A DNA stretch of 64,000 nt, taken from assembly GCF_001194135.2 (NCBI RefSeq), contig NC_068982.1:66865200-66929199 (forward strand), written 5' to 3'. Positions 326 to 53,830 of this stretch are shown in pieces. The notes beneath the pieces are model-generated. The model saw only the letters and a program-made list of their open reading frames with translations. It made no database searches and had not been told where the DNA came from. The DNA comes from Octopus bimaculoides (Eukaryota). The translations under genes and the position numbers were made by a program. How positions within the stretch are numbered: the stretch's first letter is position 1; the number at the start of each line of letters is the position of its first letter.

Positions 326-1169
326 GGTGCTTTTTATGCTTCACTTGGGACTAAGAGGAGGAGGAGTAGTTAGGAAACACGGAACAAAGAAGGAAAGAAA
401 CAAGCATAGTAGTAATAATGTGTGTGTGTGTGTGTGTGTGTGTGAAGAGAGGATCGGGTGTATGTGTGTGTGCATAAGTGCATGTGCATGTGTATGTATA
501 TGTATTACTGTATGTTCATATGTGTGTATATGTATATGTATACATGTGTGTATGTGTGTATACATGACCACATGTGTATGTGTGTGTCAATGGAAATCTG
601 TGAGATGACAGCTAGAAAGAAGGTAGTGGCACAATGGACAGGAATTACTGAAGTATGGTGGGATAGTATCAGAGGTGAGCTAATGATCAATGAGGTAATT
701 GGATGGAGGGGGGGGGAGAAAAAGGGAGGTGGAGGGGTTAAAAGATAGTTTTAGGTGTTGATCAGTGTGTGTTTGCAGGTGACAGAGGAGGGTGGGGAAC
801 ATAAAAGTTAAGTGTCAGGAGATTTCTGAATGAATGAATGAATNNNNNNNNNNNNNNNNNNNNNNNNNNNNNNNNNNNNNNNNNNNNNNNNNNNNNNNNN
901 NNNNNNNNNNNNNNNNNNNNNNNNNNNNNNNNNNNNNNNNNNNNNNNNNNNNNNNNNNNNNNNNNNNNNNNNNNNNNNNNNNNNNNNNNNNNNNNNNNNN
1001 NNNNNNNNNNNNNNNNNNNNNNNNNNNNNNNNNNNNNNNNNNNNNNNNNNNNNNNNNNNNNNNNNNNNNNNNNNNNNNNNNNNNNNNNNNNNNNNNNNNN
1101 NNNNNNNNNNNNNNNNNNNNNNNNNNNNNNNNNNNNNNNNNNNNNNNNNNNNNNNNNNNNNNNNNNNNN

Positions 1170-3910: not shown

Positions 3911-4390
3911 AACAATAACAATAATAATTCTTTCTACTAAAGGTATAAGGCCTGAAATTTGGGGGAGGGGGTAAGTCAATTACATCAACTCCAATGTTTC
4001 ACTGGTACTTAATTTATCAACCCTGAAAGGCTGAAAGGCAAAGTCGACCTCAGTAGAATTTGAAATCAGAACATAGCAACAGACAAAATACCACTAAGCA
4101 ATTCGCAAGGCATGCTAACGGTTCTGCCAGCGTGCTACCTTAAAATGATAATGATAATAATAATAATAATAATCCTTTCTACTTAAGGCATAAGGCCTGA
4201 AATTTTGTGTAAGGGAAGGAGTCGATAACATCGACCCTAGTACGCAAGTGGTACTTAATTTATTGCTACCGAAACAATGAATGGCAAAGTCGACCTTGGC
4301 AGAATTTGAACTCAGAACATAGTGATGAGTGAAATACAGCTAGGCTTTTCATCCAGCGTGCTAATGATTCTGCCAGCTTGCTGCCTTAAT
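3908..4390 (-). mobile_element. Two tandem copies of tRNA-derived SINE family C
   Basis: Each has head AAGGCRGCRAGCTGGCAGAA..GAGTTCAAATTC (B box), central GACTTTGCCTTTCATCC..GATAAATTAAGTACCA and a (TTA)n tail. Confidence 0.85.
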
Positions 4391-4678
4391 AATAATAATA
4401 ATGATGATGAAGATGAACTGTATTGTATACAGTGCTTAGGTGCACAGTTTGTCAGATAATGTTAAATGAGGGGACAAAAAGCTGACATATAAATCAAGCA
4501 AAGAAGACAGCAACAATGAAAGCTAGAAGTGCAATGGAAGCAAGTAGGCTAAAAGCTAGGGTTAGCTGTCTCATGGATCTGAGTTCAAATTCTGTGGCAG
4601 ACAACTTTGACTTTCACCTCTATGGGACTATTAAAACAAACTACAGAAGTATACCGGTCTTGATAATCAATTACAATC

Positions 4679-7216
4679 ATCATCATCAATCTTTATCATC
4701 ATTTATTGTCCGCTTTCCATGCTAGCAAGGGTTGGACGATTTGACTGAGGTCTGGCGAACCAGATGGCTGCACCAACCTGCTGAGGGCCACTGACCAGAC
4801 CTGTGAATGGTGCAAAGTCCCCTCTTGGCCCAAAATAACATAGTGGTGGAACAATGCTGTTGACAGGGCTATTAGAGAAAAGAAACAGGCTTGGAAGAAC
4901 TGGAAGAATGGTGGCAGCAGGGAATTGCATCAGACTGCTAGAAGGGAAGCTAGGTGACAGGTTTATTTAGCCAGAGGGGAAGCAGATAAGAAAAAATTTG
5001 CCAATGTTCTGAGGACCAAAGACGTGAGGTATTTCGTGATGCAAGACAGTGTGTGAGAGAGAATCGTGATGTCATAGAAGAGAAATGTGTCCGCATGGAT
5101 GATGGTTCACTTGCACTAAACAAGGCTGCAAAGAGAGAGGTCTGGAGATGCCACTATGAAAGGTTGCTCAATAAAGAGAATGAATGGGAAAAAGAGAGTC
5201 TGCTAAATGTCGACCCAACAGAGGGACCAGCTATCCGAGTTGACAGTACCATGTTAGATAAAGCAATTAAGAGTATGAAGACAGGGAAAGCCCCCGGCCC
5301 ATCAGGAATCACTGCAGAGATGCTCAAAATATCTGNNNNNNNNNNCTGCGACAAAGGTAAAGGTGACGCTTTAAATACAAATAATTACAGAGGTATCAAG
5401 TTGTTAGATCAGGTAATGAAGGTCACGGCGAGGGTCATAGCCCAACTAATTAGGGAGCGAGTCAGTTTAGATGAAATGCAGTTTGGGTTCGTGCCAGGGA
5501 AAAGTACCACTGATGCTATATTTCTGGTAAGACAGCTGCAAGAGAAATACCTAGCCAAGGATAAACCTCTGTACTTGGCTTTCATTGACATGGAGAAAGC
5601 CTTTGACAGGGTCCCCCAATCCCTTATCTGGTGGTCAATGACGAAACTAGGGATAGATGAAGGGTTAGCTGTGAGAGTTGTGCAGGCCATATACAGGGAC
5701 GCTGTCAGTAAGGTGAGGGTTGGCAACAAGTACAATGAAGAATTCTGAGTAGAGGTAGGAGTGCACCAAGATTCAGTCCTCAGCCCCCTCCTATTTATCA
5801 TAGTCCTCCAGGCAATAACAGAGGAATTCAAGACAGGATGCCCCTGGGAGCTCCTCTGTGCTGACGACTATCAGACAACTAATTGCTAAGTCACTATCAG
5901 AACTAGAGGAGAAGTTTCAGGTGTGGAAACAAGGATTAGAATTGAAGGGCCGTAGAGTCAACCTAGTTAAAGCCAAAGTCCTAATAAGTAGGAATGCAGA
6001 CAAACCACAAATCTCTTCAGGTAGATAGCCCTGCTCGATCTGTAGAAAAGGCATAGGTAGAAACTCTAAAAGATGTACCCAGTGTAAGCTATGGACACAC
6101 AAGAGGTGCAGCAACATCAAAGGAAGGCTAAATGGGAAGATGGTTTTTGTATGTAGCAGATGCTCAGGAGCAATAAACACTGAAAATGTGCAGAGAACAA
6201 CTTCCATCACATTCCAGTGAGAAAAAGTAGAAGTAGTTGATAGTTTCCGTTACCTAGGTGACCAAGTCAGTAGCCGGAGAGGGGGGCACTGAAAGTGTAG
6301 CTGCTAGAATAAGACTAGCCTGGGCAAAGTTCAGAGAGCTCTTACCTCTGCTGGTGACAAGGGGCCTCTCACTCAGAGTAAAAGGCAGACTGTATGACGC
6401 ATGTGTACGAACAGCTATGCTACATGGCAGTGAAACATGGGCCGTGACTGCTGAGGACATGCGTAAGCTTGCAAGAAACAAATCCAGTAGGCTCCGATGG
6501 ATGTGTAATGTCAGTGTGCATACTCGACAGAGTGTAAGTACCTTAAGAGAAGAGTTAGACCTAAGAAGCATCAGATGTGGTGTGCAAGAGTATGGCCATG
6601 TGGTGAGAATGGATGAGGATAGGTGTGTGAAAAAGTGCCACATCTTAGCGGTTGAGGGAACCTGTGGAAGAGGTAGACCCAGGAAGACCTGGGATGAGGT
6701 GGTGAAGCATGACCTTCGAACATTAGGCCTCACCGAGGCAATGACTAGTGACCAAGACCTTAGGAAATATGCAGTGCGTGAGAAGACCCAGCAAGCCAAG
6801 TGAGACCATAACCCGTGACCTATGCCAGGGGTGTAACCAGCCCACTTATGCTTACCTTTCCTTCATTGGACACTAAACTCTGCTTGCGAAGACCTGTTGA
6901 GTCAAGTGAAATCGAAATCAAATGAAATTCGCAAATGTGATGACTGGCACCCGTGCCAATGAAGCACTAAGAGCACCATCTAAGTATGATCGCTGCCAGA
7001 ACAGCTGACTGGCTTCCATGCCAGTGGCACGTAAAAAGCACCATTCGAATGTGATCGTTACCAGCATTGCCTTACTGGCACATGAAAAAATATTCGAGCG
7101 AGGTCATTGCCAGTGCCGCTGGACTGGCTCCTGTGCAAGTGGCATATAAAAAACACCACTTGAGCGTGGCTGTTGCCAGTACTGCCTGACTGGCCCTCAT
7201 GCCGGTGGCACGTAAA
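4679..7216. mobile_element. RTE-clade non-LTR retrotransposon insertion with an inverted 5' part and 14-bp TSD
   Basis: 3' terminus plus (GAT)n tail on minus at 4679-4775; ORF2 and 3' UTR on plus at 4776-7216; AATCAATTACAATC at 4665-4678 and 7217-7230. Confidence 0.85.
4776..6803 (+). pseudogene. Disrupted RTE ORF2: reverse transcriptase, Cys-rich segment and C-terminus
   Basis: KAPGPSGI, QFGFVPGKSTTDAIF, AFIDMEKAFDRVP, GVHQDSVLSPLLF, LLCADD (5851-5868, YADD equivalent), CSICRKG..C..C..HKRC, GRGRPRKTWDEVVK; several stops and frameshifts. Confidence 0.92.
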
Positions 7217-7934
7217 AATCAATTACAATCTATAGAAAAAATAAATGGGGGACATGTGGAATTGGAAATAATCATCATTAAGTTAGTTCAGTGATTCCTA
7301 AGTATTTATAAGTCTTGTGTTTTCTTCTAATTTTCTCTTTATTTCTTTTTCTCATTTAATATTCATTGATCAATTTTTCTCTTTTGACACAATTTTCAAA
7401 TCCAAGTTTTCATGCTGGAAATGGCTAATGTGTATAATTTACAACACATACCTTATGCTCATCCATATATGCACAATGCTTGATAGTCATCCTGAAGCAC
7501 TTCTATCCACATAGAGCCAAGGACAGGCTCTTGGAATATTCCTCTTCTGATAGGATTTTATCATTTTTTTTTGTCTATTGGTTAGAGTTGTGCAATTGCC
7601 TTTGATTTACTCATTTCATGCTTGAGGTTACTCTTTGTTTTTGGTGTTACTTCACTCATAGATAATGTTTTCAAAGTGCTTATGTAGAGAGCACTATCTA
7701 GAAATCAATCCATGCCAGGCTCAGGCCCTTCTTCCTTCTATAATTTTCCTTTATGGATTTATTGGTAGGTTAACTGATCCTTTACATCCATACAAGCATT
7801 TCCATTATCCACTTTGATTTTCTAGAAGCATGTTTACCTTGAAATCCCCCACCCCACCACCATCGCTGCTGCCACCAGGTGAGCATTTACTTTTTGTAAT
7901 AATATTATCTGTGAATACTATAGGATGCCAAAAG

Positions 7935-8150: not shown

Positions 8151-9022
8151 TATAGGCTATAGGTTTTAGAGTTTCATCATTGCCACTGCCACTGCTACCA
8201 CCATTGCTGTTGTTACCGCCACCACCTCCACTGCTGCTACTGTTGTGCCACTGCTTCTGCCATGGCTACCATCATTGTTTTGAATGACCACTTTTTCCAT
8301 ACTTGAATGGGTTGGACAGAATTTGTTGAGGTAGATTTTCTACAGCAAGATGTTTTTTCTGTTGCCAAACTTCTCCTGTTTCCAAGCAAGATAACATTCC
8401 TCATGATCAGATATATTTCATGGAAGAGCGAAAACAAAAGACCACTTGTAAGATGGTGGCATTTCTTCAGTTTTGAGGTTTTGAGGAATAGGATGGTCAA
8501 TGTCTTGGTGAGTTATTCAAGTGTTATTTCTCACACTTCTAGGAAATTGTTAAATAATACCTTTGTAATTATTGATAGGTATTTTTTGCAATAAGAAGAA
8601 TGCATACATCAGCAAGAAAAAAATCTGAAACAAATATTCTTTCAGTGGAGTTCTCCATGCTATATCTGTTCTGCACTGAATTACAGACACTCCCTTATCA
8701 CTCTCATTGAGAAAAATGCAGTGAATCAGTGACAGGCTCATTAGAAACCTGTAATCAACAATGCAAACTTTTCACTACTTATGATAAAATTAAATAAATA
8801 ATTAAAGCAACAGTTTGGCAGATAGTGGTGAATTGGGTAAGTTATTAGGGACATTTGTTGCGTTTATTCCAACTCTTTGTACTCTAAGTTCAAATCACAC
8901 TATGGTTGACTCTACATTTAATCCCTTCAGGATCAATAATACAAATCCAAAGCAGTAGATTGGCAGAATTGTTAGAAAATCAGATGAGTTCATCCATTTT
9001 CCCATGTTAGCATGGGTTAGAA

Positions 9023-12065: not shown

Positions 12066-13068
12066 TAAATACTAATTTCCGTGTGTGTTCCTGTGCATGT
12101 GAGAGAGTGCATTTGGCACTCTTGATATGTAGGCTGTACTAAAAGAATGTTGAAACTTTCCAGGTGCCAGCACAGGGAAAGGATGATCTATCATTCCTGT
12201 TTACCCAGACTCCAAATAGATAGTTCATTCTATACATACTTACACATACACACACAGTCATACATAAATGCATACACACATATATACATTTATACACACA
12301 CACACACACACACACATACACAGATGGATGGATGGATGGATGGACGTGCAAAAGCAGACAGTGGGGACCAACATAGCCCACAGGTTAGTTGGATTCTGTC
12401 AAACTGGCTAATGTATGCATGCATGGAACATGGACATTAAATGATGATGACGATGATATATAAATTATCAGCTAGTTGTTCATAAGTAATAAAAAGCACA
12501 CTCAAAATGTTTAATCGAGCAGTTATATATTGGTCAATATGTCTGAAGAGTCATCAATATTGTCTAGGTGTAATAGTCAGTGGAAAACCAATGCTAACAT
12601 TCTGATGAGTAATATGCCTGCTAAACAATACATGGATATATATATAATGATATGTAATTGTAAGATCCAAGGATCTAGGTGTAGGAAGTTAGTAAGCTTC
12701 AAGAAGTCTATAGTAGGTACAAAAAACAACTTTTAGGAACAATAATAGTTTATTGGTGTATAACTAGTGGAGTACATGTTGTTGAGTAATTATTACTTTC
12801 AAGGTTCTGCTAGCTAGGAAACATATGTAGCTTGGATTTTACCTGCTCTATTCCATCAATTTGGATTTATATATGTGTANNNNNNNNNNNNNNNNNNNNN
12901 NNNNNNNNNNNNNNNNNNNNNNNNNNNNNNNNNNNNNNNNNNNNNNNNNNNNNNNNNNNNNNNNNNNNNNNNNNNNNNNNNNNNNNNNNNNNNNNNNNNN
13001 NNNNNNNNNNNNNNNNNNNNNNNNNNNNNNNNNNNNNNNNNNNNNATATATATATATATATATATAAA

Positions 13069-13850: not shown

Positions 13851-14642
13851 TAACTGTGTGCGTATTTGTGTATCTGTACACAAAGTCACACCCGACGTTG
13901 TCCGGGTGTGACTTAGTACGCCAGCTACAATAAGTCTTGCTAGGTGAAAATCAACTAAAGAAGAAAGCCTTACAACGAAAAAACCCTTATGATGTAAATA
14001 TGTTCATAATTCAAAAGACGAGGAAATTAATAAGGAAAGTCTGAAGGCTGTTTTGCGTAACATTATTAAGCGTACGTAAATTTCATCCGTCTAATTGGCT
14101 GTACAAATGCTTGTGCAAAACAACTTTTTGCGCTGCCTTGATTATACATAGCAGGGTAATCCCTTTTCGCAGGAGCTAGGATGGCAATTTCTGATGAAGC
14201 AATTGCTGGCGATCTGTGGCTACACAGTTCTGCCAGAATTTTATCAGATTGGGANNNNNNNNNNNNNNNNNNNNNNNNNNNNNNNNNNNNNNNNNNNNNN
14301 NNNNNNNNNNNNNNNNNNNNNNNNNNNNNNNNNNNNNNNNNNNNNNNNNNNNNNNNNNNNNNNNNNNNNNNNNNNNNNNNNNNNNNNNNNNNNNNNNNNN
14401 NNNNNNNNNNNNNNNNNNNNNNNNNNNNNNNNNNNNNNNNNNNNNNNNNNNNNNNNNNNNNNNNNNNNNNNNNNNNNNNNNNNNNNNNNNNNNNNNNNNN
14501 NNNNNNNNNNNNNNNNNNNNNNNNNNNNNNNNNNNNNNNNNNNNNNNNNNNNNNNNNNNNNNNNNNNNNNNNNNNNNNNNNNNNNNNNNNNNNNNNNNNN
14601 NNNNNNNNNNNNNNNNNNNNNNNNNNNNAGTTTTCACATTTC

Positions 14643-14805: not shown

Positions 14806-15975
14806 CACATTTCTAATGAAGTTCACTGATTTGCAATGTGTTGACCTGTCTACATAAGCTCCGTAGTTTGTATATTTACAAAACATTGACGAACATGAGT
14901 TATATTGTAGTGAATGCTTGTGTGTACATGCGCGTGTATGTGTTTGAGAGAGCGAGAGAGAAGAGGGAGAGAGGAGGAGAAAGGAATAGAGAATGGGAGC
15001 AATGAAGAGAGAGAAAGAGAGGAAGGGAAAATGGAAGACAGTTATAAAATAGCAATGCATGCACGTGTTTATATAAGAAACACACACAAAGTAAATCTTA
15101 TATCTATAATGTTGATGTGTGTATGTGTTTATGTGTATGTTGTTGTCACAGATAATGTATGTGTGGTTGTGTGTGTTTTTACGTTTCTATGTTATGAAAA
15201 ATGGGTAAAAAAATACTAAGAGGAGACAAGGACGCTGAACATGCAGACAGACAATGGTCGAAGCAAAGAAATGGCGATAAGCCCCAGATGACCAGGTCAC
15301 GTGGATAGTTAGAGGTAGAGGGATAGAAGAAAGCTATTTAAATGGGAGAGAGGAAGAAGAACGAAATAAGAGTGAAAAGGTAGATAGAAGGAAAGAATAG
15401 TCTTAAACCAAGTTAATCTATGACTTTGTATGTATCACTTTCTCTCTCTCTCTCTCCCTCTTTTACTCTTACTCTCTATATTATATGTTGAGCGCGTGAT
15501 TGATGTGTAAGAACGCCGGTACAGGTAGAATGGAAGAAATATAAAAGTTGCTAGAAACAGCCAAATTTCNNNNNNNNNNNNNNNNNNNNNNNNNNNNNNN
15601 NNNNNNNNNNNNNNNNNNNNNNNNNNNNNNNNNNNNNNNNNNNNNNNNNNNNNNNNNNNNNNNNNNNNNNNNNNNNNNNNNNNNNNNNNNNNNNNNNNNN
15701 NNNNNNNNNNNNNNNNNNNNNNNNNNNNNNNNNNNNNNNNNNNNNNNNNNNNNNNNNNNNNNNNNNNNNNNNNNNNNNNNNNNNNNNNNNNNNNNNNNNN
15801 NNNNNNNNNNNNNNNNNNNNNNNNNNNNNNNNNNNNNNNNNNNNNNNNNNNNNNNNNNNNNNNNNNNNNNNNNNNNNNNNNNNNNNNNNNNNNNNNNNNN
15901 NNNNNNNNNNNNNNNAAGAGAGGAGGAGAGGGGGATGGGAGGGAGGGAGGGGAAGGAGAGGGAAGGGAGAGGTGA

Positions 15976-17828: not shown

Positions 17829-19140
17829 AACACCCTATATACGTGTGTGTGTGTTTGTGTGTGTATGTGCACGTGCGCATGTACATATGCATTTTTCACT
17901 GCATTCACATCTGTCCCCATCTCTAACTATGCCACTATCCTGTCACACTCTCACAAATTGAACTTCCCCACCCCAAATTCCTGATCCTTTGGCCTCCCCA
18001 TTCTCTCTTCTATTCACCTCCTTGTACTTTGAGTACACTTATGAATGGATCTGGTAGCTGGAAAGTGAAAGAGGCCCGTCATGTGTGTGTGTGTGTGTGC
18101 GTATATGCACACATATTCTTCTCCCTTGTTATCTGGGGTTGCCATGTATCTCCTCCATCCTCCAAAATAAGACACCTGTTCCTAGCTGCCTTCATACTTT
18201 AGCCTCTCAAGACCTGGCACAAAGTCACTTCTTTCAACAATAGACTGTCACTTAGTCAAAGGATCTTATTTTGTGAGTTACGTAGCTACCCCACTAGTGT
18301 TGGTGCCACAGAAAAAAAAAAACGCAACCAATGCACTCTATGAAGTGGTTAGTTTTAGGAAGGACATCTAGCTATAGAAACCTTGCCAGAAGTGGAAATT
18401 GTTGTTTAAAGCAGGCCTCTAGCTTCTTGGATCTTGTCAAACCATCCAACAAATGCCAGCATGAAATGGAGATGTCAAATGATGATCATGTGTGTGTGTG
18501 TGTGCGCATGTGTGTTTGTGTGTGTTTGTGTGTGTGTGCGAGAAAGAGAGAGAGAATGCAAATGATAGTGAGAGAGAGAATGAGGAAAAGTATGTGTATG
18601 TATGTGTGAGAGCACGCACATGAAAGAGAAAGAGAAAATGTGTATATGTATGTGTGTGTGTGTGTATGCATGTGAAAGAGAGAGAGAGAAAATGAGGAAA
18701 AGTATATGTAGGTGTTTGTGTGTGAGTATGTGTGAGCGTGTGCATGTTTGTGAGAGAGAGAATGAGACGGTTAGAGAGAGGGAGAGAGGAAATGAGAGAC
18801 AGTTAGAGAGAGAGAATGAAGAAAAGTGTGTGTATGTGCGAGTGAGAGAGAGAAAGAGTGTGTGTTTGTGTCTCTTTGTCTCGATATTGAAGAATAGTTG
18901 CAAACAAGCACCACTGACACAAGAAATTTTGTTTGCTTCCCATCTTTCATGGAAACATGCCTGGCTATGGATGTCACATATTACTTTGCTTGGAGACAGG
19001 TGCAGGCCGAAGACAGAAAAGGCATTTGGCCAAAGAAAAAACAACTCTGCCTCAATGAATTCTGCCTGACCCATGCAGGTAAGGAAAAATGGATGTTAAA
19101 ACGATGATGATGATGATGATGATAATGATTATATGGGTAT

Positions 19141-19940: not shown

Positions 19941-21698
19941 CTGAAACAAGAAACATTAGGAGGAGTCGAAGACAGATTTTAATAAGTTTTAATAATGATT
20001 TAGGATACATCTGAAATGTGTACATATTGATACATGTGTCTCTAATGTCTTTGGGGAAAGACATAAATGCAATGATGATGATAATGATGATGATGACAGT
20101 GATGGTGACGATGATGATACAGGTTGTTTGTCTGCAAATATACATGTGTTGTGTATATCTGTGTGAGTGTGCATGTGTGTGCAATTTCATGAACATAAAC
20201 AACACACACATATTTACATGCATATGTGTATTTGTGTATGCCTGTGCAATCATACACAAACACACATATAGAAGAATGCATTTGTGAAATCACATGCACA
20301 CAAACACACATACATGCACACATACATACATACATACATACATACTCAAACATACACACACACAAAAACACATGCCAAATCTTTCAATTATTCATTTATG
20401 TTAATAAGACTAGAAAAGCCCTATTCATCAGTGAGTTTCATCAAGCACACCGTAACACATGACAAATATGTTGTATAAATTTTCAGACTTGATTTCGTAA
20501 TTTGAATACATCCTCTGCTCTTAGTCTTTGAGATGCACTGGATTATCTCATTCCATTTTGAATTCCAATTGTGTTAGATAAAATTTTATAACAGCGAGTG
20601 ACATAGAAAAAAAAACACTTGAACAGCATGAATTCACATTTTTAATTCAATTCAACATCCAGCACTTGAATGATGATCACAATGATGTGGATGACAACCA
20701 TCATCATCATCGCCACCACTGGTTTATTGTCCATTTTTTCCATGTGCGCATAGATTCACACAGAATTTATTGAGACAGATTTTCTATAGCTGGATGCCCT
20801 TCCTGCCACTAACCCTTACATGCTTCCAAGCAATGTAATAGCTCTCCCATGGCTGGATATGCTTTCAAAGAATACTGGAAATGACTGACACTGCTTGTAT
20901 GACAATGATACTCATTTAAAACTATTTTGCAATATCAAGACAAAACACTTGGTTGGTAGAGTTAAAATGGCACTTTTGACTTATTGAAATATTCAAAATG
21001 TTTAATTCTTACACATATTCACCTGATGAAAACAGTTTTTTTTTTCACATGATGTAATATTTATATTCACCAAAAAAAAAACACATCTGAAACAGCTGTA
21101 GTGAACCACAATCCATCTGTTGTTGTTTATATATTCTTTTATTCTTTTCTTTTACTTATTTCAGTCATTTCACTGCAGCCATGCTGGAGCACCGCCTTTA
21201 GTCGTGAAGCACCGTCTTTAGTCGTGGAGCACCGCCTTTAGTCGTGGAGCACTGCCTTAACAACATGGACAGGGTGTTTATTTCATGCTACCTGCATTAT
21301 TGAGGTCACTATGCAAGTTCGCAGGATCATGAGCCCTGATGGGAGGTGGGAGGAGTGTCAGTATCTTGCTAGGGGATGAGGGGACTATGGTGAGATGGCA
21401 AATGGGTGCAGAACACTCATATCTTGCAGGGAAAAGGGGAGAGAGGAATAGCAAAAGATCAATAGGAACTGTAAGAAATAAATAATAGTAATGAGGTGCT
21501 TGGGTGCCTCCACACTGTACAAACTAAGTAGAAGTGGGTGGATGGGTGGGTTGCATTTTAGGGGGAGCTAGGAATGAAGAGGCAGAATGTTAAGATTAGA
21601 AGGGTTGAAGGGTGGGTGAAGCAAGAAACATGAGCTGAGAAAGATAGAGGGATGCAGAAGAAAGGATGGGGGAAGTGAATAGCAGGAGTAGTGTATAT

Positions 21699-22019: not shown

Positions 22020-22029
22020 NNNNNNNNNN

Positions 22030-31554: not shown

Positions 31555-31745
31555 GCCAACAATTTTGTGGGTGGGGGTAAGTCAGTTACATCAATCCTAG
31601 TGCTCAGGTGATACTTATTTTATCAACCTTGAAAGGATGAAAGGTAATGTTGACTTTGGCAGAGTTTGAACTCAGGACATAATGATGAATGAAATGCCGT
31701 TGAGCATTTTGCACAGTGTGCTAATGATTCTGCCAGCTCGCCACT

Positions 31746-31747
<2 letters not shown>
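31555..31747 (-). mobile_element. SINE family C
   Basis: Head adjacent to (AAT)n at 31748-31798. Confidence 0.8.
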
Positions 31748-31800
<53 letters not shown>

Positions 31801-32703
31801 ATTAACAGCCAAAATAAAGATCTCTAATATAAACACAATTAGTCTATTAGTCATCAGTCTATTGGCATTGATCTATTAGTGAATGGCTTCAACAGTTCAT
31901 AGTGTATTTTGTCACTGATGTCAATAGCCTCTGGTGTTTTAGTTAATGGTCTTTAGTCACCAGTGGATAGTCAGTCATTGGTGTATTAATTAATGGTTAT
32001 AGTCACTGGCTGTTGTACAAACATGAAAATGGAGTTGTCACAAAATGAATAGAAATCAAGCAGATAAAGTAGAATTTATGCAAAATTTAGTATAACTTCA
32101 ATTAGAGTTTTTGAAATTTAAGTTTATGCGTTGGTTGGTTTACATACGCATACAATAGGCACAGACATGGCTGTGTGGTTGTAAAGTTTGCTTCCCAACC
32201 ATGTGATCTTGGGTTCAGTCCCACTGTGTGACACCTTGTGTCCTACTACAGCACTAGGCTGACAAAAGCCTCATGGGTGGATTTTGAAATGGAAACTGAA
32301 AGAAGCTCGTCACACACACACATATATATATATATAGGTTATTTCTCTCTCTCTCACACACACATGATGAGCTTCTTTCAATTCCCATCTACCATATATA
32401 TATATATAAGCATGAATGCGTGTGTGTGTTTCTGTGTATCCTGTCTTGACATCATGTGATGGTCATGAACAAACATTACCATTATACAAGTGATGTTGTT
32501 CATATCTAATCTTCTACGAAAATATGTCCAACCATGGTTTAAATATCACCTGGGTTAGAAACAGGTGAAGGTTGACAATAGGAAGGGCATCTGGCCATGG
32601 AAAATCTGCCTCAACAAATTCCGTTTGACCCATGCAAGTATGGAAAAGTGAACATTGAATGAAGGTAATGATGATGATAACATGCACACGCTTTCAGTAT
32701 ATA

Positions 32704-32738: not shown

Positions 32739-33377
32739 TACTTTCAATATAACAAGAATGATATTTATAGCTGGAAGATTACTATCCATTTATCTAATTA
32801 AAAAGAAAGTTTAGATATCATCATAGATCTGTCATAATATGATAAGAAATAATGGTGTAAGAAACCAGTTATATTAAACTAGAAATAGCCAAGATCATAA
32901 CAAGAATGATATAATGAATGCTATTTGTAGAAAGAACTGTCCAAGACGTGAGAAACAGATATACAAAAGATATAAATTCATATTAATATATTAAAAAAAA
33001 AAAAAATTCCTTCTGGAACATTTCAGTTAAAATATCAATTTCTAACATTGGTCACAGCCAGAAATTAGGGGTGGAAGAGGAGAGATAGTCAATTACATTG
33101 ACTATATTAATCGAATGAATGGTACACAACTTTTTCTATACCAAAGTGAGTTGAACATTGAACATAAAGTCTTCAACAAAATACCATAAAATATTTTGTA
33201 CAATGCTCAACTAATTCTGACATCTACAACTCAATTCCAACAATAACTAAAATTTCTCAACATCAACATTACAGGACCAGGCATAACTGCATGGTTAACA
33301 AGCTCACTTTACCACATGGTTTTAGATTCAATTCCATTGGTAGTACAAACAGGATAAATAAAACTCAGTATATCATC

Positions 33378-33700
33378 ATCATCATTTAACATCCACCTTC
33401 TATGCTGGCATGGGTTGGACGGTTTGACAGAAGCTGGCCAGGTAGAAGACTACACCAGGTTACTGTGTCTGTTTTGACATGGTTTTTATGAATGAATGCC
33501 CTTCCTAACACCAACCACCCTGCAGAGTGGACTGAGTGCTTTTTATGTGGTACCAGCGCAGGTGAGGTCAGTTTTAGCATGGTTCTTAGAGCTGGATGCC
33601 CTTCCAAATGCTAACCACTTCACAGTGTGGACTGGATGCTTTTCACGTGGCAACAGCACCAACAGGGTCACCAAGTAACTTACAAGGCAAGGAATTTTTG
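33378..33700 (-). mobile_element. RTE 3'-tail fragment
   Basis: ATCATCATTTAAC..CATGGGTTGGACGG..GCTGGATGCCCTTCC. Confidence 0.75.
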
Positions 33701-36964: not shown

Positions 36965-38594
36965 ACACGAACACAAAACATCCGGACAGTTAAGTGATGC
37001 AAAAATGGGACAACAAAACATCCAGATAGATGATACATAGAAAACAAGGATGGGTCATTCAGAGTTTAGATAATACACACGTACATACATATATACATAT
37101 GCACACATACAAGTGAGCACATAAGTGAAAAACAAGGTGGAAAAAATAGTACTTGAATACCAAAGGTAGAGTAATATATTTTTTATTCATCATCATTATC
37201 GTTTAACATACACTTTCCATACTGGAATGGGTTGGACGGTTTGATTGAGGCCTGGCATAGATACATACACACACGCACAGTGATTACCATCCCTTTGTGC
37301 TTCCTCATTGTCAATGGCGTTTCTGACTTTCCATCCATGACTTCTCAGATGACTATTCAGACCTGTTGCAGATCTGCATGGTTTAAAGCATAGGTGACAG
37401 ACGAAAGTTGTAATTTACTGTATGCTTCCACACACACACACACACACACAAAATGAAGGCAGTCAAGACAGGAATATGTAGTGCATAGAGAGGACTAAGG
37501 AGAAAAATTAATGAAGAGACAGAGAAAAGAAAGATAAGAAGAAACATGGGGGAAAGTTTGATATATTTAGAACAGATAGATAGATAGATCAAAAACAGTG
37601 AACCTCAATCTAAAATTGAAAGATCATCAGTATTGAGTGAACTCCTACAAAAATCACTATCATTGTAAAGAAAAAAGAAAAATACATACAAATGTTATTG
37701 ACATTTTTCCCCCGTTCCTTTAAAGGAAATTGTGTATGTGAATGAATATATATAATGAAAGAGAGAGAGAGAGTTGAAGGGAAAGGAAGAAAGAGAAACA
37801 GTTTCATGTATATTTGTGTTGAACCATCTTGCTTCATTATGTTAGTGCCTTTATTATGCAATGAATCCTTCTTCATGACAGTATTGTCAGATTTGAGTAG
37901 TGTTTGTAACAGGTTAGACAACCATATAAGCTAAATAAGCACAGCACAAAAAAACAAAGCCAAGGTAGGATACTGGGCACATTGAGGAGATATTAATGAG
38001 GCCAAAGAAAATTTTTAACTATAGGATTTGGAGAAACTGATAAATGGAAGAGATGAATCACATTGTAGACAATCATCAATATGAATGATGAGTCAGCCCT
38101 TGTCTACATGCATCAAGAGGAAAAAATGCATTATATGCAGTGAATGATAGCAAGTGATTTGAATGGTATAACTTTTGTATAAGCAAGCACAGATGTAAAC
38201 AAACACGGGTGCACACACACATACATGTACACTGGGGCTGGAGGAGATGTCCTCCTGGGGCTAAAAGCAACAGTAACATCCACCCCTAGGGGTCAGCCAC
38301 ACTTAAGTGGCAATATACTACACTATATATATATATATATAGAGAGAGAGAGATAGATAGATAGATAGATACATATATATATATAAAAATATACTATTGA
38401 GTGGACAAATGAATGAAAGGCACTCAACCTATTTATTGGGCTGATTACTAGCATCACACTTGAAACTCAAGAGTACTAATGAATTTGAATCAAACTGTTT
38501 TGATCTTATATACTAGACTACCTATGACCTGTTGAGTCACTGGGAAAGTCTGAGTTTCCCAGCAATGCAGTTTTATTTCATGGGCTTTTTTTCC

Positions 38595-39065: not shown

Positions 39066-39584
39066 AGAATTTGTGGAAGTCGTTCAACAGGAGAGTCCAT
39101 CATATATTATATATACACACACACATACATAAGCACACATGATAGGCTTCTTTTCAGCTTCCTTGTACCAAATCTGCTCACAAGATTTTGGTTGGTCTGG
39201 GGGTTTTGTAGGAGACACTTATCCATGATGCTGAGCAGTGGGACAGAAGAAACTTGCCCAAGGTGAGACTTACATCTATATCTCAAGTTATCCCTCAAAA
39301 TAATATGTAGAGTATTATCAATGAATTAACAAGTTTGTCAGCATATGTACTGTTATACAAATAAAAGGGAAAAGTTTAGCTATATCCACTATAAATAGCT
39401 TTAAGCTACTATCTCTCTCTTAACAGAAGATGGGTATTCTTTTTCTGATGAAAGTGTAATAAGTGTAGAAACTAGTCAGATCAATCATATGAGAGACAAA
39501 AACTTTTGGTGTAACCTTTTAATTCACTTCACACAATAAGGTCAAAATTCTATGTTTATCATAAAACATATATACTTACTGGCT

Positions 39585-39899
39585 CCGGTGCCGGTGGCAT
39601 GTAAAAAGCACCAACCAATCATGACCAACACCAGTACACCCGTACTGGTGGCACGTAAAAAGCACCATCCGAACGTGATTGTTGCCAGGCCCACCTTACT
39701 GGCTCCTGTGCCGGAGGCAGGTAAAAAGCACCCACTACACTCTTGGAATGGTTGGCGTTAGGAAGGGCATCCAGCTGCAGAAACTCTGCCAGACCAGACT
39801 GGAGCCTGGTGCAGCCACTGGCTCTCCAGACCTCAGTCAAACTGTTCAACCCATGCCATCATGGAAAACGGACATTAATCAATGATGATGATGATGATA
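39585..39899 (+). mobile_element. Intact-order RTE 3' UTR and tail (tandem GTGGCACGTAAAAAGCACC units to (GAT)n)
   Basis: Same units as 6940-7216; continues through GTTAGGAAGGGCATCCAGCTG to TGGTGCAGCC..GATGATGAT. Confidence 0.85.
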
Positions 39900-41939: not shown

Positions 41940-41949
41940 NNNNNNNNNN

Positions 41950-44222: not shown

Positions 44223-44528
44223 TTGTGTGTATTTTTATATATATATATATATATATATACACGCTACTGAGTGTTTGGTGTTAGGAAGGGCATCCAGCTG
44301 TAAAGATCTTGCGAAAACAGTTACAAAAGTCTGGTGCAGGCTTCTGCCTGGCTGGCTCTTGTCAAACTGTCCTGTCCTACCCATGCTAACATGGTAGGTG
44401 GACATTAAATGATAATGATGATGATATATATATCATCATCATTATCATCATTTAATGTCCGTTTTCCATGCTAGCATGGGTTGGACAGTTTAACAGGTGT
44501 TGACCACCCAAGGAGGTGTTCATGTACA

Positions 44529-44732: not shown

Positions 44733-45939
44733 TTAGTGAAAGGACCCTGGAGAATTACTGACTTGCCAAAATAGGTGGTGATGTTAGAAAGTAGGATGAT
44801 TGCTTGGCCAAAACTAAGTGAGTCATATGCATAAATACAATGACGTAACATAAAATGGAACCTATTGGAGTCTTTTTAAAACTGTCATGAAAGAAACAAT
44901 AAATCACCCTTAATTGGTAGTCAAGGAAAGAGCCTCTATTGTACAGCTTTTTGACCTGCTGGAAGTAGCACACAAACCCCATACCTGACTATCTCTTGCA
45001 TGTTATTAAAATAGTATGGATATCTCATATTTCAGAAAGTGATAAACATTGCACTGCTTATTAAACAGCTAGCTTTTTCTTTTTTTAAAATGTTGGTAAG
45101 AAACCAAATGCTAAGAAATGAAAGAACTAATGTTGTCAACTAAATCTGATAGAAATAGTCGCCAAATCTCTCATAATTACACTATTAACCTTTTAAAAGG
45201 AAGAATACATTTAGCCTTAGATTAGTTATGTCTGGAAAATAAAAACAGGGTCACAACAACAATCTATTTAGCAATCTGAACATATGACAGTTTAAAAAAA
45301 AAACTGGTCTCAAGTTTTGACACAAGGTCAGCAATTTTGTGGGCGGGATTACATCAATAACATTGACCCCAGTGCTTAACTGATACTTATTTTATCGACC
45401 CTGAAAGGATGAAAGGCAAAGTCAATCATGCCGAAATTTGAACTCAGAATGTAAAGACAGATGAAATACTACTAAGCATTTTGCCTGATGTGCTAATGAT
45501 TCAGCCAGCTCACCACTCTAGTTTAAAAAAAAATATTAAAGATAAATATTTCTGGTGTTCCTAAAATGTACAATTTATATAAAACCAGAGAATTTGACCA
45601 GCTTACAAGGTAAACAGAGTAAGTGGTGGTGCTGCAATCTTGATCAATATGTTTCTCTGGCTCTTGTTATTTTTGTTGTATCCTATCTACCTTCTAGGTC
45701 CAGTACTAACTACTATTCCAGTCCTTCATCCTTAGAATGTTATTGCTCTGGAATCTCCTCCTCATCAATGTCTTTCCTGCAGGTGTTTACTAGCAGCAGC
45801 TTAAATGGAACACTAATGACATCAAGCTTATCAACCTACAAAAGTCTGCCCTTTTGTCTAAATAAAAGAGGAAAGGAAGGATGAAAAATTAAGCTTATCT
45901 CTTCAAGGTCTGTGATTTTGTCCCTGTAGGTGATCAAGA

Positions 45940-46413: not shown

Positions 46414-47699
46414 ACTTTATAGCTGAGCAGATAACATTATGAAAGGGGGTCTAGCTAAAAGTGAATAAGGTTATCTCTACATGGGTGCTTGACCTCTAGA
46501 AATAGCAGTAAAATCTCTCTTAAATCAGATTCTATGGTCTTAATAAGAAAAGGAACTTTAAAAAATAGACAGGATGATCACATCCATAACACCTTTGATC
46601 ATAGGTGTGTTCACTCAGGATTGACCTGGAGTTTAAATAACAACTACTACTGCAATTGCTGCTGCTGCAATTGATCCGATAAATAAAAGAAATCTCACTA
46701 AAGTAAGCATGTAAAAAGAGTAAAACCAGGAAAAAAATTAAATAATATATAAATCAAAATTCATACATCAGATTCAAACCTTTAGTTTTCCATGAATCTG
46801 CCAACCCTACTTAAAATATTTTCTCTATTTCAATCTAAAGCATAACAAAATGGCCACTCTCTTTTATGTTGTTATAACAATATTCTGCACATAGAAATAT
46901 CTTGATTGTTTTTAAAATGTTTACTTTGTTTTCTTTACAAAAGATTGTAAAACTTTTGTTGAGTTCAAGAGAATACATAAAGTTTCTACATGTTCCTTAA
47001 AAAAAACTATTTCTAGCTTATAAAATCTTTAGTATTTGCTGATGCTTACAAATAACAAATAGCAAAAAATATCTTACAAGCTTTATATTGCTGAATACGT
47101 TTTATTTTAACCAATGACCTTGCTTTGCTTTAAATAGCTTCTCAGCAGAAAATACAAAGCAGATTTTTTGGTGTTCTCTTTACGAACCTCACAAATAAAA
47201 CAATCAGCAGAGCAGAATATTGATGTTTGATTCCTGATCAATTTACTTATCGTGTCAGATTACATTGCCTCTGAAGTTGTTTTTGCTTTTTGCTTTTTTT
47301 TTTCCCCTCTTGTTTCTTCCCCCCACCCAAATAGCCATATCTTCTTTAACAATATATATATTCTGTCAATGTTCTCTCTTCATAAATGTTAGATAAATCA
47401 ATAGCATACACAGAATCATTATAACATATACAACAAATGGTAATTTATTAAATTGTTATGCTATGTCACAATGCTATACAATGCAATTCTTACTGCTGTC
47501 ATCAGCACTGCCATCTCCAAACCACAACCACCAATGACACCATTATCTATTCTCCCTTGTTTGTAGGGGTTGGGCAGGTCTTCATCAACACAATGTTTTG
47601 TCACTTGTTGCAGACTTTTATCACTTCTTTCGTAAGGTTCACCCAACAAATGTGTGTTTGTGAGTGTGCATGCGCATGCATGCATGTACACATCATATA

Positions 47700-48465
47700 T
47701 GAGGATAAACCTTAAAGTAAGGTCTCCAAAACGCTGGGGACATGAGAAAACTGTGCATGCAGCTATTGGCAACACTGTTGTGTTTGTTGTGTATGCATCT
47801 GCCCCTGCGCACATCTCATTGCCATGCTCAATCTTGGTTTGGCAGCTCTCAATTGATGCTACCACCAAGTGTGTAGTTCATGCAGTTATTTGGTTTTTGA
47901 AGGCAAAAGGCAGTAAACTAATTAAAATTCATCGCCAATTAATGGAAGTGTATGGAGAGTCGTGCGTGGATGTCAAAAATGTCCGCAAGTGGTGTAGGGA
48001 GTTTGCAGCTAGTCATACTGAAATTCATCATGAAGAAAGAAGCAGGTAACCATCAATTTCCGATGAGACAGTCGCGAAGGTTGAGCAAATCCTGCATGAA
48101 AATCAGCGGATCACTCTGGATGATCTCCGCATTTTGGTTCCTGAAGTTTCCTGAAGCACCATTCAAAGTGTGAAAAGTTGCAATATTGGAAGGTGTGCGC
48201 AAGATGGGTCCCACGAATGCTCACAGAAGACCATAAATGGCAACCCACCTTATAGTCTGGACTTGACACCCAGTGACTACCACCTGTTCCTTAAGTTGAA
48301 AGAACATTTGGCTGGAATGCATTTCAGCAATGACGATGAGGTGAAAGATGAGGTTCAACACTTCCTCAACGACATGGCGGTGAGCTGGTATGACATGGAC
48401 ATACAAAAACTGCCCCAGCAACTACAAAAATGCATCGACTGAAATGGCAAATATGTAGAAAAACA
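47700..48465 (+). mobile_element. Mariner-type transposon remnant with the catalytic core deleted
   Basis: TA|TGAGGATAAACC left end; HTH (IHRQLMEVYGE..VRKWCREF), RWVPRMLTEDHK joined directly to PPYSLDLTPSDYHLF. Confidence 0.88.
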
Positions 48466-49080: not shown

Positions 49081-50692
49081 CACACATACACATATCAGAG
49101 TTAAAAAGAGAAAGGTAATCTACTTTGAAGTCCATTCAATCAAGGTGTTTCCACTAATATAGTTAGAAGCTTGTGAAGCTAATTAGAAGGCATTTCTCAA
49201 GAATCCATAGATATCATAAACTCTTTAATTTCTATAACATCAAGGTTAGCTATTCATGCATAGATAATATGACTGCCAATACTGCATGCTACAACAGAAA
49301 CAAACAAGCACCCACAAAATCTTCATGCCACGCTCCATTCTATAACTGTTGAAATCTTACCAGGTATCTAGTAAAAGGAAGCTGCCTCTCAAAGGCTGTT
49401 ATCTAAAGAATCAACCTCAGACCGTACACTAGAATGGCAGCCTAGATTTTAAGGGAAGCTATACACAACACCTCATTAAACACTCCTATCTGAACATCCT
49501 ATTACTGTGTTCAGTATTAACATGGTTACTGATTTAGTATTATGGTAGAGACATCTATTTACTGACTTTTAATATTATGCACTTTGCTACTGTTACAAAG
49601 CTTGTGTTTGTGGATTTTGGGAAATTACTTTAAAAATTGCTCTCATTCTCTATAATATACCTTTCTTTTCACTATTGTTAACTCATGCAAAGGAACTCAA
49701 CAACTCCTCACTCTAGAACTGAAATATGAAGTATTAAACCCTGACCAGCTACAAAGTCACAAGAAAATGATTTCCAGTAGCTTTTTAGCCCAGACATGAT
49801 AATATAGTTCAGAATGACCAGTGTATATGAATCAGTTCAGTAGAGATGACCTAGATGAAAATAGAGCTATGATAGATTGAAGAAATATGATATGGGATGG
49901 AGCTGGGCAGAGTAGACTATGAACAGGAAATAATCAAATATATCACTTTGTATAAATTGGTCGCAAGGTGGTGGTGGGATTTGCTTCCAGAAAAAACAAA
50001 AAAGAAAACAAAAGATTATTTTAAGTTACAGGATCGATATTTCTATATAATTCAGAAATATGGATAGTAACAATGTAACTTGGGGAAAATATGTTGTACT
50101 ATTCATTGTAGGGAATCTAAAATATTCTCAGATATAATGGAAAGGCTAAAGTGTTTGAACCGGGTTTATGGGTTCTGTATGAAAGTTGATATGAATGAAG
50201 AGTGAATGAATGAGAAAGAAATACATGAGAAAGAAGTGGTTCACTGTAAGATTTGAGCATATAACAAGAGATTGTCAACATTTTATGATGTGTATAAGAT
50301 TGAATTACCTTAAATTATGCAGTTTATGATATGAGTGAGAGTAACATTAGTTGAATTCTTTGTTTTATGGTGTGGAAACTAATAAAGAAATGATTTGTGG
50401 GTGTTAATCCTTTTGGTACCAACCTGCCTAAGAGCACCTCCAATTCTTTTACACAAAACCATCATCAACACCTCTACCATCATCATCATCTCTCCCACAA
50501 TCATTGTCATCGTCTATTTAATGTCTACTTTTCCATGCTTGCATGGGTCAAATGAGAGTATGTTGTGGCAGAGTTATCTATGCCAGAGGCCCTTCCTGTC
50601 ACTAATCCCCACTTGAATTTAGACTGTCAAGACAGACAAAATACTGCTAAGCATTTTACCCAGTGTGCTAACGATTCTACCAGCTCACCACC

Positions 50693-53609: not shown

Positions 53610-53830
53610 CTTCAGGTAGCAAGCTGGCAGAATCATTAGCATGTTGGGCAAAATGCTTAGCAGTATTTCGCTTGTCATTATTGTTCTGAGTTCAAATTCT
53701 GCTGATGTTAACTTAGTCATTCATCCTTTCAGGGTTGATAAATTAAGTACCAGTGAAACACTGGGATTGATGTAATCAACAAGTTCCCTCCCCAAAATGG
53801 CTGCCTTTGTAGCAAAATTTGAAACCATTA
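53610..53830 (+). mobile_element. SINE family C
   Basis: Head, central domain and (TTA)n-like tail. Confidence 0.85.

What the first reader, a model, noticed from the sequence alone, without database searches (positions are those of the whole stretch)
4665..7230. RTE LINE insertion with twin-priming (5' inversion) architecture and a perfect 14-bp TSD
Seen: AATCAATTACAATC at 4665-4678 and 7217-7230. Between them, the last ~95 nt of the element plus its (GAT)n tail lie on minus (4679-4775), joined directly to 2.4 kb of ORF2 and 3' UTR on plus (4776-7216). The intact tail at 39585-39899 shows that the inverted part stops about 80 nt upstream of where the non-inverted part starts. The right TSD overlaps the element's GTAAAAA, and the left TSD's ATC merges with the tail, giving microhomology at both priming points. 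Established: this geometry is the twin-priming product described for mammalian L1 and, to my knowledge, seldom reported for other LINE clades. Inference: an invertebrate RTE can twin-prime. A later inversion would need one breakpoint exactly at the TSD.
Basis: partly seen in the sequence, partly recalled or inferred. Interest (0 to 1): 0.78.

Follow-up and report, generated by a model that had tools for sequence, protein, structure and literature searches.

The report
Inverted RTE retrotransposon insertion, twin-priming type
An old, broken copy of an RTE-type jumping gene lies between two identical 14-base target copies, with its last 97 bases flipped relative to the remaining 2.4 kb; this is the layout that "twin priming" gives in mammalian L1 elements, but it is one locus that could not be checked against reads.

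Summary
AATCAATTACAATC occurs exactly twice in the window, at 4665-4678 and 7217-7230. These are the two outer edges of one retrotransposon copy.

- **Flipped part (minus strand):** 4679-4775 is the element's 22-nt (GAT)n-like tail plus its last 75 nt.
- **Forward part (plus strand):** 4776-7216 is a decayed ORF2 (from residue 362 of a 1071-aa relative to the stop at 6801-6803) plus 413 nt of 3' UTR. It ends in the last GGCACGTAAAAA unit.
- **Missing between them:** 79-80 nt of the element.
- **Microhomology:** AA at the internal priming edge and ATC at the tail edge.
- **N gap (5336-5345):** it lies inside the RT domain. Both sides are collinear on the same strand, and 32 codons (about 96 nt) are missing.

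This geometry is what twin priming predicts: a very short tail-primed cDNA and a long internally primed one. Two independent insertions, a later inversion and a misassembly each need more coincidences.

Not tested:
- The empty site.
- The host organism.
- Phylogenetic placement in the RTE clade.

In the papers searched, 5' inversion outside L1 appeared once. This is a modestly interesting new member of a known kind.

The parts
4665..4678 (.). Left target-site duplication, AATCAATTACAATC. Its last ATC could equally be the first unit of the inverted tail.
   Evidence: Exact match to 7217-7230 and the only two copies in the window. Sequence read.
4679..4700 (-). Degenerate (GAT)n tail of the element, read on the minus strand as GATGATAAAGATTGATGATGAT. 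It lies directly against the left duplication.
   Evidence: Other copies and the relative L001 end in (GAT)n.
4701..4775 (-). The last 75 nt of the element's 3' UTR, inverted. It includes the conserved terminal hairpin. This is taken to be the tail-primed (first-strand) cDNA.
   Evidence: 90% identical to 59091-59189 and 82% to 39807-39898. Hairpin from RNAalifold.
4775..4777 (.). Inversion junction. Homology to the element's 3' end stops at 4775. Protein homology to ORF2 is clear from 4778. The 1-3 nt between cannot be assigned.
4776..6803 (+). ORF2 remnant: the linker after the endonuclease, the reverse transcriptase, a PHD-like zinc finger and the C-terminus. It corresponds to residues 362-1068 of P0001 and ends at the stop codon 6801-6803. 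It is decayed, with 3 frame changes and 5 in-frame stops. No endonuclease-coding part is present.
   Evidence: Pfam RVT_1, E=5e-21. BLASTP at 50% identity over 708 columns. tblastn pieces in three reading frames. Translation.
5336..5345 (.). Assembly gap of 10 Ns inside the RT domain. It hides or replaces about 96 nt (32 codons). The two sides are collinear.
   Evidence: a 32-residue gap in the query between MLK and ISC, in an otherwise continuous alignment.
6804..7216 (+). Forward-oriented 3' UTR with five degenerate GGCACGTAAAAAGCACC-type units. It is cut off after GTAAAAA of the last unit, which is the internal priming site X.
   Evidence: L001 has the same unit structure. Alignments.
7217..7230 (.). 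Right target-site duplication, AATCAATTACAATC. Its first AA overlaps the element's run of A, giving 2 nt of microhomology.

Best explanation
This is a single retrotransposition event of an RTE-like LINE that was primed from both ends of a 14-nt staggered break, that is, twin priming.

Inferred sequence of steps:
1. The element's endonuclease nicked the window's plus strand after ...AATCAATTACAATC. The 3' ATC of that strand paired with the (GAU)n tail of the element RNA.
2. Reverse transcription from that primer copied only the tail and the last 75 nt of the RNA.
3. The minus strand was nicked 14 nt away. Its 3' end, ...GATT, paired with the AA of an A-rich GUAAAAA unit that is predicted to be unpaired, 79-80 nt further upstream on the RNA.
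4. A second reverse transcription from there ran about 2.5 kb into ORF2 and stopped just after the endonuclease-coding part.
5. The two cDNA ends were then joined. The 79-80 nt between the two start points was never copied.

What is shown is the geometry, the duplication, the microhomologies, the 79-80 nt loss and the collinearity across the N gap. What is inferred is the order of nicks, the use of one RNA, and the joining pathway.

The copy is old and dead, with 5 stops, 3 frameshifts and no endonuclease domain. It has no function today.
For: - The 14/14 duplication lies exactly at both outer edges and is rare by chance.
- The tail and 75 nt are inverted against the left duplication.
- There is a single collinear ORF2 and 3' UTR on the plus strand, and no other ORF2 piece in the window.
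- The forward part ends at the fifth and last GTAAAAA unit, as in the normal layout of L001. The loss is therefore 79-80 nt and not more.
- AA and ATC give microhomology at the two outer junctions. In inverted L1, 95% of copies have such microhomology and 70% have 2-5 bp (PMC2912911).
- A duplication of 9-14 bp fits the RTE range of 7-15 (PMC6007223). It also fits the idea that inversion needs a long overhang of 10-20 nt (PMC4245944).
- The duplication begins with GAT, like the tail unit, on the tail side. Several sister copies are also followed by GAT/ATA-type sequence. This fits first-strand priming on that side.
- Both pieces are 90% identical to the same sister copy at 59091-59305: for the inverted piece, and my count of 27/30 over the last unit of the forward piece.
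- Site X is predicted to be unpaired. It is among the top 1.3% of sites on the RNA for matching the 14-nt overhang.
- Gaps between the two cDNAs are common in L1. Only 46% of inverted L1 insertions have the two cDNA ends within 20 bp of each other (PMC12016303).
- Very short tail-primed parts are a described variant (PMC2837659).
Against:
- No independent contig carrying either junction was found.
- No empty site could be examined. The flanks are unique in the window.
- A scaffold gap lies between the two junction-bearing contigs.
- It is one locus, so nothing can be said about how often this happens.
- Microhomology at the internal junction cannot be scored without a full-length copy of the same family.
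- Sites matching the overhang better than X existed on the RNA, for example 10/14 near 6916, and were not used.
- The terminal module is very abundant, with at least 14 copies in 64 kb. Chance adjacency of a tail fragment is therefore not rare in itself. Only the shared duplication argues against it.
Confidence: 0.7

Rival explanations
1. Dual priming. The break and both priming events are the same, but two different RNA molecules were used. One was an RTE or a short SINE-like RNA that shares the 3' module, primed at its tail. The other was an RTE RNA primed internally.
For: This rival was proposed for L1 and could not be told apart from twin priming there (PMC2837659). RNAs carrying the same terminal module should be plentiful, since there are at least 14 copies in 64 kb.
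Against: The two start points lie only 79-80 nt apart on the element, as expected if one RNA bridges both DNA ends. Both pieces are equally close (90%) to the same RTE-type sister copy (and my count). The inverted piece is closer to RTE-3'UTR-type copies (82-90%) than to the more diverged short copies (68-76%).
Confidence: 0.12
2. Assembly artefact. Either a contig is chimeric, or two contigs from different loci or orientations were wrongly scaffolded across the N gap.
For: This is a draft assembly with eight N runs in 64 kb. One of them lies inside the element. The element family is highly repeated. No reads could be checked.
Against: The two junction-bearing contigs carry the same non-repetitive 14-mer exactly at their element edges. 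A wrong join would not produce that. Turning a collinear element into this layout needs two separate false joins, at 4775/4776 and at 7216/7217, with at most 2 nt of shared sequence each. Overlap- or k-mer-based assemblers do not make such joins. ORF2 is collinear across the gap with a clean 32-codon loss.
Confidence: 0.08
3. A normal 5'-truncated insertion on the minus strand, followed later by an inversion of the 2.4-kb inner part together with loss of 79-80 nt.
For: It would give the same final sequence.
Against: One breakpoint would have to fall exactly (+-2 nt) at the boundary between element and duplication, with the duplication left intact. No inverted repeats are present that could drive such an inversion.
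Confidence: 0.04
4. Two unrelated insertions that happen to abut, with the 14-mer repeat arising by chance or belonging to only one of them.
For: Tail fragments are very dense, and tail-to-tail neighbours do occur, for example at 44258-44510.
Against: The forward piece lacks its own last 154 nt and its tail. A target-primed insertion would not lack these. There is no second duplication between the pieces. The chance of a repeat of 10 nt or more at fixed boundaries is below 1e-3.
Confidence: 0.03

Closest known systems
5'-inverted mammalian L1 insertions made by twin priming (Ostertag and Kazazian 2001; statistics in PMC2912911 and PMC12016303)
   Same: One pair of long target-site duplications encloses two oppositely oriented pieces of one element. 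The tail lies against one duplication and an internal site against the other. There is a short gap between the two cDNA start points and microhomology at the internally primed edge.
   Different: The element here is RTE-like. It has a single ORF, a (GAT)n microsatellite tail and a structured 3' end, where L1 has a poly(A) tail. The host is apparently not a mammal. The tail-primed piece is only 97 nt, against medians of 253-571 bp in human L1. How often this happens in this family is unknown, whereas in L1 it is 18-31% of insertions.
L1 insertions with a 5' poly(T) stretch: twin priming with an unusually short non-inverted part (Meyer et al. 2010, PMC2837659)
   Same: The tail-primed cDNA is extremely short and the internally primed cDNA makes up nearly the whole insert. 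Seen in the sense of the long piece, the insert starts with the inverted tail and lacks its own 3' end.
   Different: In those loci only the poly(A) tail was copied. Here 75 nt of element body was copied too, which makes the origin of the short piece unambiguous.
The single 5'-inverted Nimb-2_DR (zebrafish) insert recovered in chicken DT40 cells (Yamaguchi et al. 2014, PMC4245944)
   Same: It is a non-L1 LINE with duplications of about 12 bp that gave a 5' inversion. This supports the idea that a long overhang, and not L1 itself, is what matters.
   Different: That was an experimental de novo event in a vertebrate cell line. This is an old genomic copy of a different clade.
Octopus RTE-clade elements such as RTE-2_OV (Petrosino et al. 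2022, PMC9115989)
   Same: The element plan is similar: one ORF of about 3.3 kb with endonuclease and RT, and UTRs of about 600 nt. Here the reconstructed 3' UTR is 413+79+75 = 567 nt.
   Different: No sequence comparison was possible. The motifs of this element were not found in the 400 kb of the O. vulgaris transcriptome that is held. RTE-2_OV is described with a C2H2 finger, whereas relatives of this element carry a PHD finger.

Membership tests
Twin-priming (5'-inverted) LINE insertion | Two segments of one element in opposite orientation inside a single pair of target-site duplications | tested here: met
   14/14 duplication at 4665-4678 and 7217-7230. Minus-strand 3' end at 4679-4775. 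Plus-strand ORF2 and 3' UTR at 4776-7216.
Twin-priming (5'-inverted) LINE insertion | The tail lies at the outer edge of one segment. The outer edge of the other segment is an internal site close to, and upstream of, the inner end of the tail segment, giving a small deletion or duplication at the inversion point. | tested here: met
   The tail abuts the left duplication. The forward segment ends at GTAAAAA, 79-80 nt upstream of where the inverted segment starts. The layout was checked against the normal copy L001.
Twin-priming (5'-inverted) LINE insertion | Microhomology between the target overhang and the internal priming site | tested here: met
   AA is shared by the duplication and the element at 7217-7218. 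Over all 14 nt the match is 8/14, in the top 1.3% of sites, though better sites exist.
Twin-priming (5'-inverted) LINE insertion | Microhomology at the inversion junction (frequent in L1 but not obligatory) | tested here: inconclusive
   The junction can only be placed at 4775-4777. No full-length copy of the same family was available to assign the 1-3 ambiguous bases.
Twin-priming (5'-inverted) LINE insertion | Long, endonuclease-type target-site duplication (about 10-20 bp) | tested here: met
   9-14 bp, depending on how the ambiguous ATC and AA are assigned. Compared with PMC4245944 and PMC6007223.
Twin-priming (5'-inverted) LINE insertion | Both segments copied from the same RNA molecule | tested here: inconclusive
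   Both are 90% identical to sister copy 59091-59305 (27/30 by my count for the last unit). The overlap with reference copies is too short to prove one template.
Twin-priming (5'-inverted) LINE insertion | Single insertion event shown by an empty site with one copy of the target, and junctions confirmed in reads | not testable with these tools
Exact look-ups and a metagenome scan found nothing. The flanks are unique in the window.
RTE-clade LINE | One ORF encoding an N-terminal AP-type endonuclease and a reverse transcriptase, with no ORF1, in a compact element of about 3-4 kb | tested here: inconclusive
   This copy keeps only the RT half. Its relatives of about 1050 aa carry PF03372 and PF00078 (and often a PHD finger) on contigs of 3.3-4.3 kb, which leaves no room for an ORF1. 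Those contigs may be incomplete.
RTE-clade LINE | 3' end is a short microsatellite, not poly(A) | tested here: met
   (GAT)n on this copy, on sister copies and on L001.
RTE-clade LINE | Target-site duplications of 7-15 bp whose first bases echo the tail repeat | tested here: met
   9-14 bp. Read in the tail's orientation, the duplication starts with GAT. Rule taken from PMC6007223.
RTE-clade LINE | 3' module shared with abundant short (SINE-like or truncated) copies | tested here: met
   At least 14 copies of the terminal module in the window. The terminal hairpin is conserved.
RTE-clade LINE | RT groups with RTE reference elements in a phylogeny of LINE clades | not tested
   No named reference set of LINE clades was available. 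The database hits carried no informative names.

The most novel reading that the evidence does not exclude
Twin priming is not peculiar to L1 or to mammalian cells. It is a general outcome for AP-endonuclease LINEs that make long staggered breaks. In this RTE family it recurs, with the second primer landing preferentially on the unpaired A-rich GUAAAAA linkers of the 3' UTR. A genome-wide census would then show many inverted copies with shared duplications and clustered internal priming sites.
Probability: 0.3. Interest if true: 0.55.

Novelty: new member of a known kind. Interest (0 to 1): 0.4.

Why it matters
The cell-culture study I read (PMC4245944) found 5' inversions almost only for human L1 in human cells. 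It proposed that a long 3' overhang is needed for the second priming.

A clean RTE example with a 9-14 bp duplication fits that rule in another clade and in a host that is apparently not a mammal. It gives a concrete family in which the rule could be tested genome-wide.

There are also two practical points. Inverted copies like this one are easily annotated as two unrelated fragments. And they show that 3'-truncated, tail-less LINE pieces need not come from deletions.

Tried and rejected
1. **Read-level check.** No junction, and not the N gap either, was checked against reads.
2. **Independent assemblies.** Exact look-ups of ORFs spanning the left junction and the inversion junction, and of two other window ORFs, were not on record. 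The best protein relatives are only 50-67% identical. The source genome's own copies therefore seem to be absent from that collection, and I ran no further search on a junction ORF.
3. **Empty site.** A metagenome scan for the left flank plus the 14-mer found nothing. The flanks next to the insert are unique in the window, so no other copy of a host repeat could stand in for the empty site.
4. **Wider sample of the family.** A scan with a conserved 28-mer returned six contigs. These are two loci that share only a 42-nt core and have no ORF2, so they were useless for counting inversions.
5. **Organism.** There were no Rfam hits and no names in the protein clusters. Motifs of the element and of the window's commonest SINE-like repeat were absent from the held part of an Octopus vulgaris transcriptome. 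My recollection that this repeat is octopus-like stays unverified.
6. **Extended pairing of the overhang.** The idea that the right duplication is really diverged element sequence, or that the whole 14-nt overhang paired with the RNA, was not supported. The gapped resemblance to the element's continuation is weak. The ungapped match is 8/14 and better sites exist.
7. **Literature.** A search for '5 inversion' together with RTE gave only irrelevant papers. Ostertag and Kazazian 2001 and Ichiyanagi and Okada 2008 are not held.
Full report
**Observation.** The 14-mer AATCAATTACAATC is present exactly twice in the 64-kb window, at 4665-4678 and 7217-7230, even with one mismatch allowed. Shuffled sequence gives 0.08 matches on average. 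To ask how often such a repeat appears at two fixed boundaries, I drew 200,000 random boundary pairs at the same spacing, with +-3 nt of slop. An exact repeat of 10 nt or more appeared 165 times, or 8e-4. I suspect, but did not check, that most of these fall in the window's many microsatellites. The observed 14-mer is not low-complexity sequence.

**What lies between the repeats.**
- **Inverted piece.** 4679-4775, read on the minus strand, is the end of a repeated element...TGGTGCAGCCATCTGGTTCGCCAGACCTCAGTCAAATCGTCCAACCCTTGCTAGCATGGAAAGCGGACAATAAAT, followed by GATGATAAAGATTGATGATGAT. It is 90% identical to the end of the copy at 59091-59305 and 82% identical to the copy at 39585-39899. The piece is therefore 75 nt of element body (4701-4775) plus a 22-nt degenerate (GAT)n tail (4679-4700), and the tail touches the left 14-mer.
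- **Forward piece.** From 4776 the plus strand encodes a reverse transcriptase (Pfam RVT_1, E=5e-21). A read-through translation aligns over its whole length with residues 362-1068 of P0001, a 1071-residue endonuclease-RT-PHD protein, at 50% identity.
- **Only one ORF2 copy.** tblastn finds this single ORF2 copy and no other in the window. It is collinear on the plus strand and lies in three different reading frames. It also has five in-frame stops. No endonuclease-coding sequence is present anywhere in the window.
- **3' UTR.** The stop codon is at 6801-6803. 6804-7216 is 3' UTR containing five degenerate GGCACGTAAAAAGCACC-type units, and it ends after GTAAAAA of the last unit, directly against the right 14-mer.

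**Normal layout of the family.** A 67%-identical relative recovered from a metagenome scaffold (L001) shows the uninterrupted order:
1. ORF2 stop.
2. About 370 nt containing the same GGTGGCACGTAAAA units.
3. A terminal module of about 170 nt that includes GGTTGGCGTTAGGAAGGGCATCCAGCTG and a terminal hairpin.
4. (GAT)n.

The 5'-truncated copies at 59091-59305 and 39585-39899 have the same order. Measured on the 59091-59305 copy, the sequence between GTAAAAA and TGGTG is 79 nt. In this locus that stretch is absent. In the element's own coordinates, the forward piece ends 79-80 nt upstream of where the inverted piece begins. Five units in both L001 and this copy show that the break is in the last unit, so nothing more is missing.

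**The assembly gap.** The 10 Ns at 5336-5345 lie in the N-terminal part of the RT domain. The protein alignment is continuous on both sides, on the same strand and in the same order. It shows one clean gap of 32 residues exactly there (...AEMLK / ISCDKGKGDAL...). About 96 nt are therefore hidden or deleted. The stated length of 10 is a placeholder, and the apparent continuity of the reading frame across it means nothing. The gap separates the contig that carries the left duplication and the inversion junction from the contig that carries the right duplication. Both contigs carry the same non-repetitive 14-mer exactly at their element edges, which is independent evidence that they belong together.

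**Fit to twin priming.** Read in the orientation of the tail (window minus strand), the locus is: duplication - [antisense copy running from internal site X back to Y in ORF2] - [sense copy from Z to the tail] - duplication. X lies 79-80 nt upstream of Z. This is the layout described for twin priming (PMC2912911; PMC2837659; PMC12016303).
- The plus-strand 3' end ...CAATC can pair with the (GAU)n tail.
- The minus-strand 3' end ...TGATT can pair with the AA of GUAAAAA. Extending it gives exactly the observed minus-strand sequence GATTGTAATTGATT-TTTACGTGCC.
- In human and chimpanzee L1, 95% of inverted copies have microhomology at this junction, and about 70% have 2-5 bp.
- Gaps between the two cDNAs are common. 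Only 46% of inverted L1 insertions have the two cDNA ends within 20 bp.
- Cases in which the tail-primed cDNA is extremely short are a described variant.
- The duplication is 9-14 bp once the ambiguous ATC and AA are allowed for. That fits the RTE range of 7-15 bp with a peak at 10-12. It also fits the proposal that 5' inversion needs a long overhang of 10-20 nt.
- On the tail side the duplication begins with GAT. Several sister copies are also followed by GAT/ATA-type sequence. This agrees with the reported echo between the RTE tail repeat and the first bases of the duplication, and it suggests that the tail side was nicked first.

**Weaker mechanistic hints.**
- An RNAalifold consensus of five terminal modules predicts a conserved terminal hairpin and a second hairpin. 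It puts X in an unpaired A-rich linker and Z in the 5' arm of the second hairpin. With five sequences this is only suggestive.
- The 14-nt overhang matches the RNA at X in 8 of 14 positions. That is in the top 1.3% of all positions on the reconstructed RNA. Better sites existed, for example 10/14 near 6916, so pairing alone did not choose the site.
- The gapped resemblance between the right duplication and the element's continuation is not significant by my rough estimate.

**Rivals.**
- **Dual priming with two RNAs** cannot be excluded. The terminal module is very abundant, with at least 14 copies in 64 kb, so such RNAs may have been plentiful. Against it, the two start points are only 79-80 nt apart, and both pieces are equally similar (90%) to the same sister copy.
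- **Misassembly** would need two separate false joins with at most 2 nt of overlap each, plus a coincidental 14-mer. I rate it unlikely, but it is untested.
- **A later inversion** needs a breakpoint exactly at the boundary between element and duplication.
- **Two independent insertions** do not explain why the forward piece lacks its last 154 nt and its tail, or why no second duplication lies between the pieces.

**What could not be done.**
- Exact look-ups of junction-spanning ORFs, and a metagenome scan for the flank plus the 14-mer, found nothing.
- The flanks are unique in the window, so no stand-in empty site exists there.
- The organism was not identified.
- RTE membership rests on hallmarks: the architecture and size of relatives, the microsatellite tail, the duplication length, and the 3' module shared with short copies. 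It does not rest on a phylogeny.

**Novelty.** Of 106 papers in the searchable library that mention twin priming, the 40 listed are almost all about mammalian L1 and the RNAs it mobilises. Combining the term with RTE or with 'clade' added no report for RTE elements. The one non-L1 5' inversion I found is a single Nimb-2_DR insert in DT40 cells, in a study that saw none for ZfL2-1. The library is incomplete, and two key papers were not held. I therefore class the locus as a new member of a known kind: a textbook-geometry twin-priming product from an RTE-like element. It is of moderate interest, mainly as a lead for a genome-wide census.

Noticed in passing
window 44258-44510: Two copies of the element's 3' end lie tail to tail: ...GATGATGAT ATATATA ATCATCATC.... 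The tails face inward, which is the opposite of what twin or dual priming would give. A likely cause is that one copy inserted into the GAT/ATA-type sequence right after the other's tail.
   Followed up: partly
window 8270-8332, 12347-12458, 18319-18490, 19050-19126, 20776-20820, 32570-32676, 33372-33662, 37187-37260, 39579-39899, 44258-44510, 50496-50548, 53361-53560, 59091-59305: The terminal module of about 200 nt from this element's 3' UTR occurs at least 14 times in 64 kb, at 65-90% identity. These copies are 5'-truncated or SINE-like. The one at 33372-33662 carries two modules in tandem.
   Followed up: partly
window 59212-59245 and 39744-39777; L002-L007: A core of about 42 nt, GGTTGGCGTTAGGAAGGGCATCCAGCTGTAGAAA, in the 3' UTR is nearly identical in two unrelated loci from JGI metagenome contigs that share nothing else with this element. 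It may be a deeply conserved SINE/LINE central domain.
   Followed up: partly
window: downstream edges of the copies ending at 39899, 33372, 12458, 37187, 44432, 44427, 32676: Several copies have (GAT)n followed directly by ATA or TATA-type sequence. This suggests a target preference for GAT/ATA-rich sites. The duplications of these old copies could not be delimited.
   Followed up: partly
window 47654-48049 (+): This ORF contains an HTH_48 domain of Mos1/mariner-type transposases (Pfam, E=9e-6). It is a fragment of a mariner-like DNA transposon.
   Followed up: partly
window 4000-4417, with copies at 61379-61889, 53591-53755, 31588-31780, 45354-45510 and others: The sequence just left of the insertion's unique flank belongs to another abundant repeat family, at 72-82% identity. 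A further SINE-like repeat...CACAAGGCTTTGGTCGGCCCGAGGCTATAGTAGAAGACACTTGCCCAAGGTGCCACGCAGTGGGACTGAACC..., recurs next to microsatellites, for example at 1280-1420.
   Followed up: no
window 6029-6125: The ORF2 remnant carries a PHD-like zinc finger (CSICRKGIGRNSKRCTQCKLWTHKRCSNIKG) between the RT core and the C-terminal region. Many relatives have the matching PF00628.
   Followed up: partly
window 844-1169, 12880-13045, 14255-14628, 15570-15915, 22020-22029, 41940-41949, 50940-50989: There are seven further assembly gaps of 10 to 374 Ns. The window is a scaffolded draft, rich in TA, TG and CA microsatellites.
   Followed up: no
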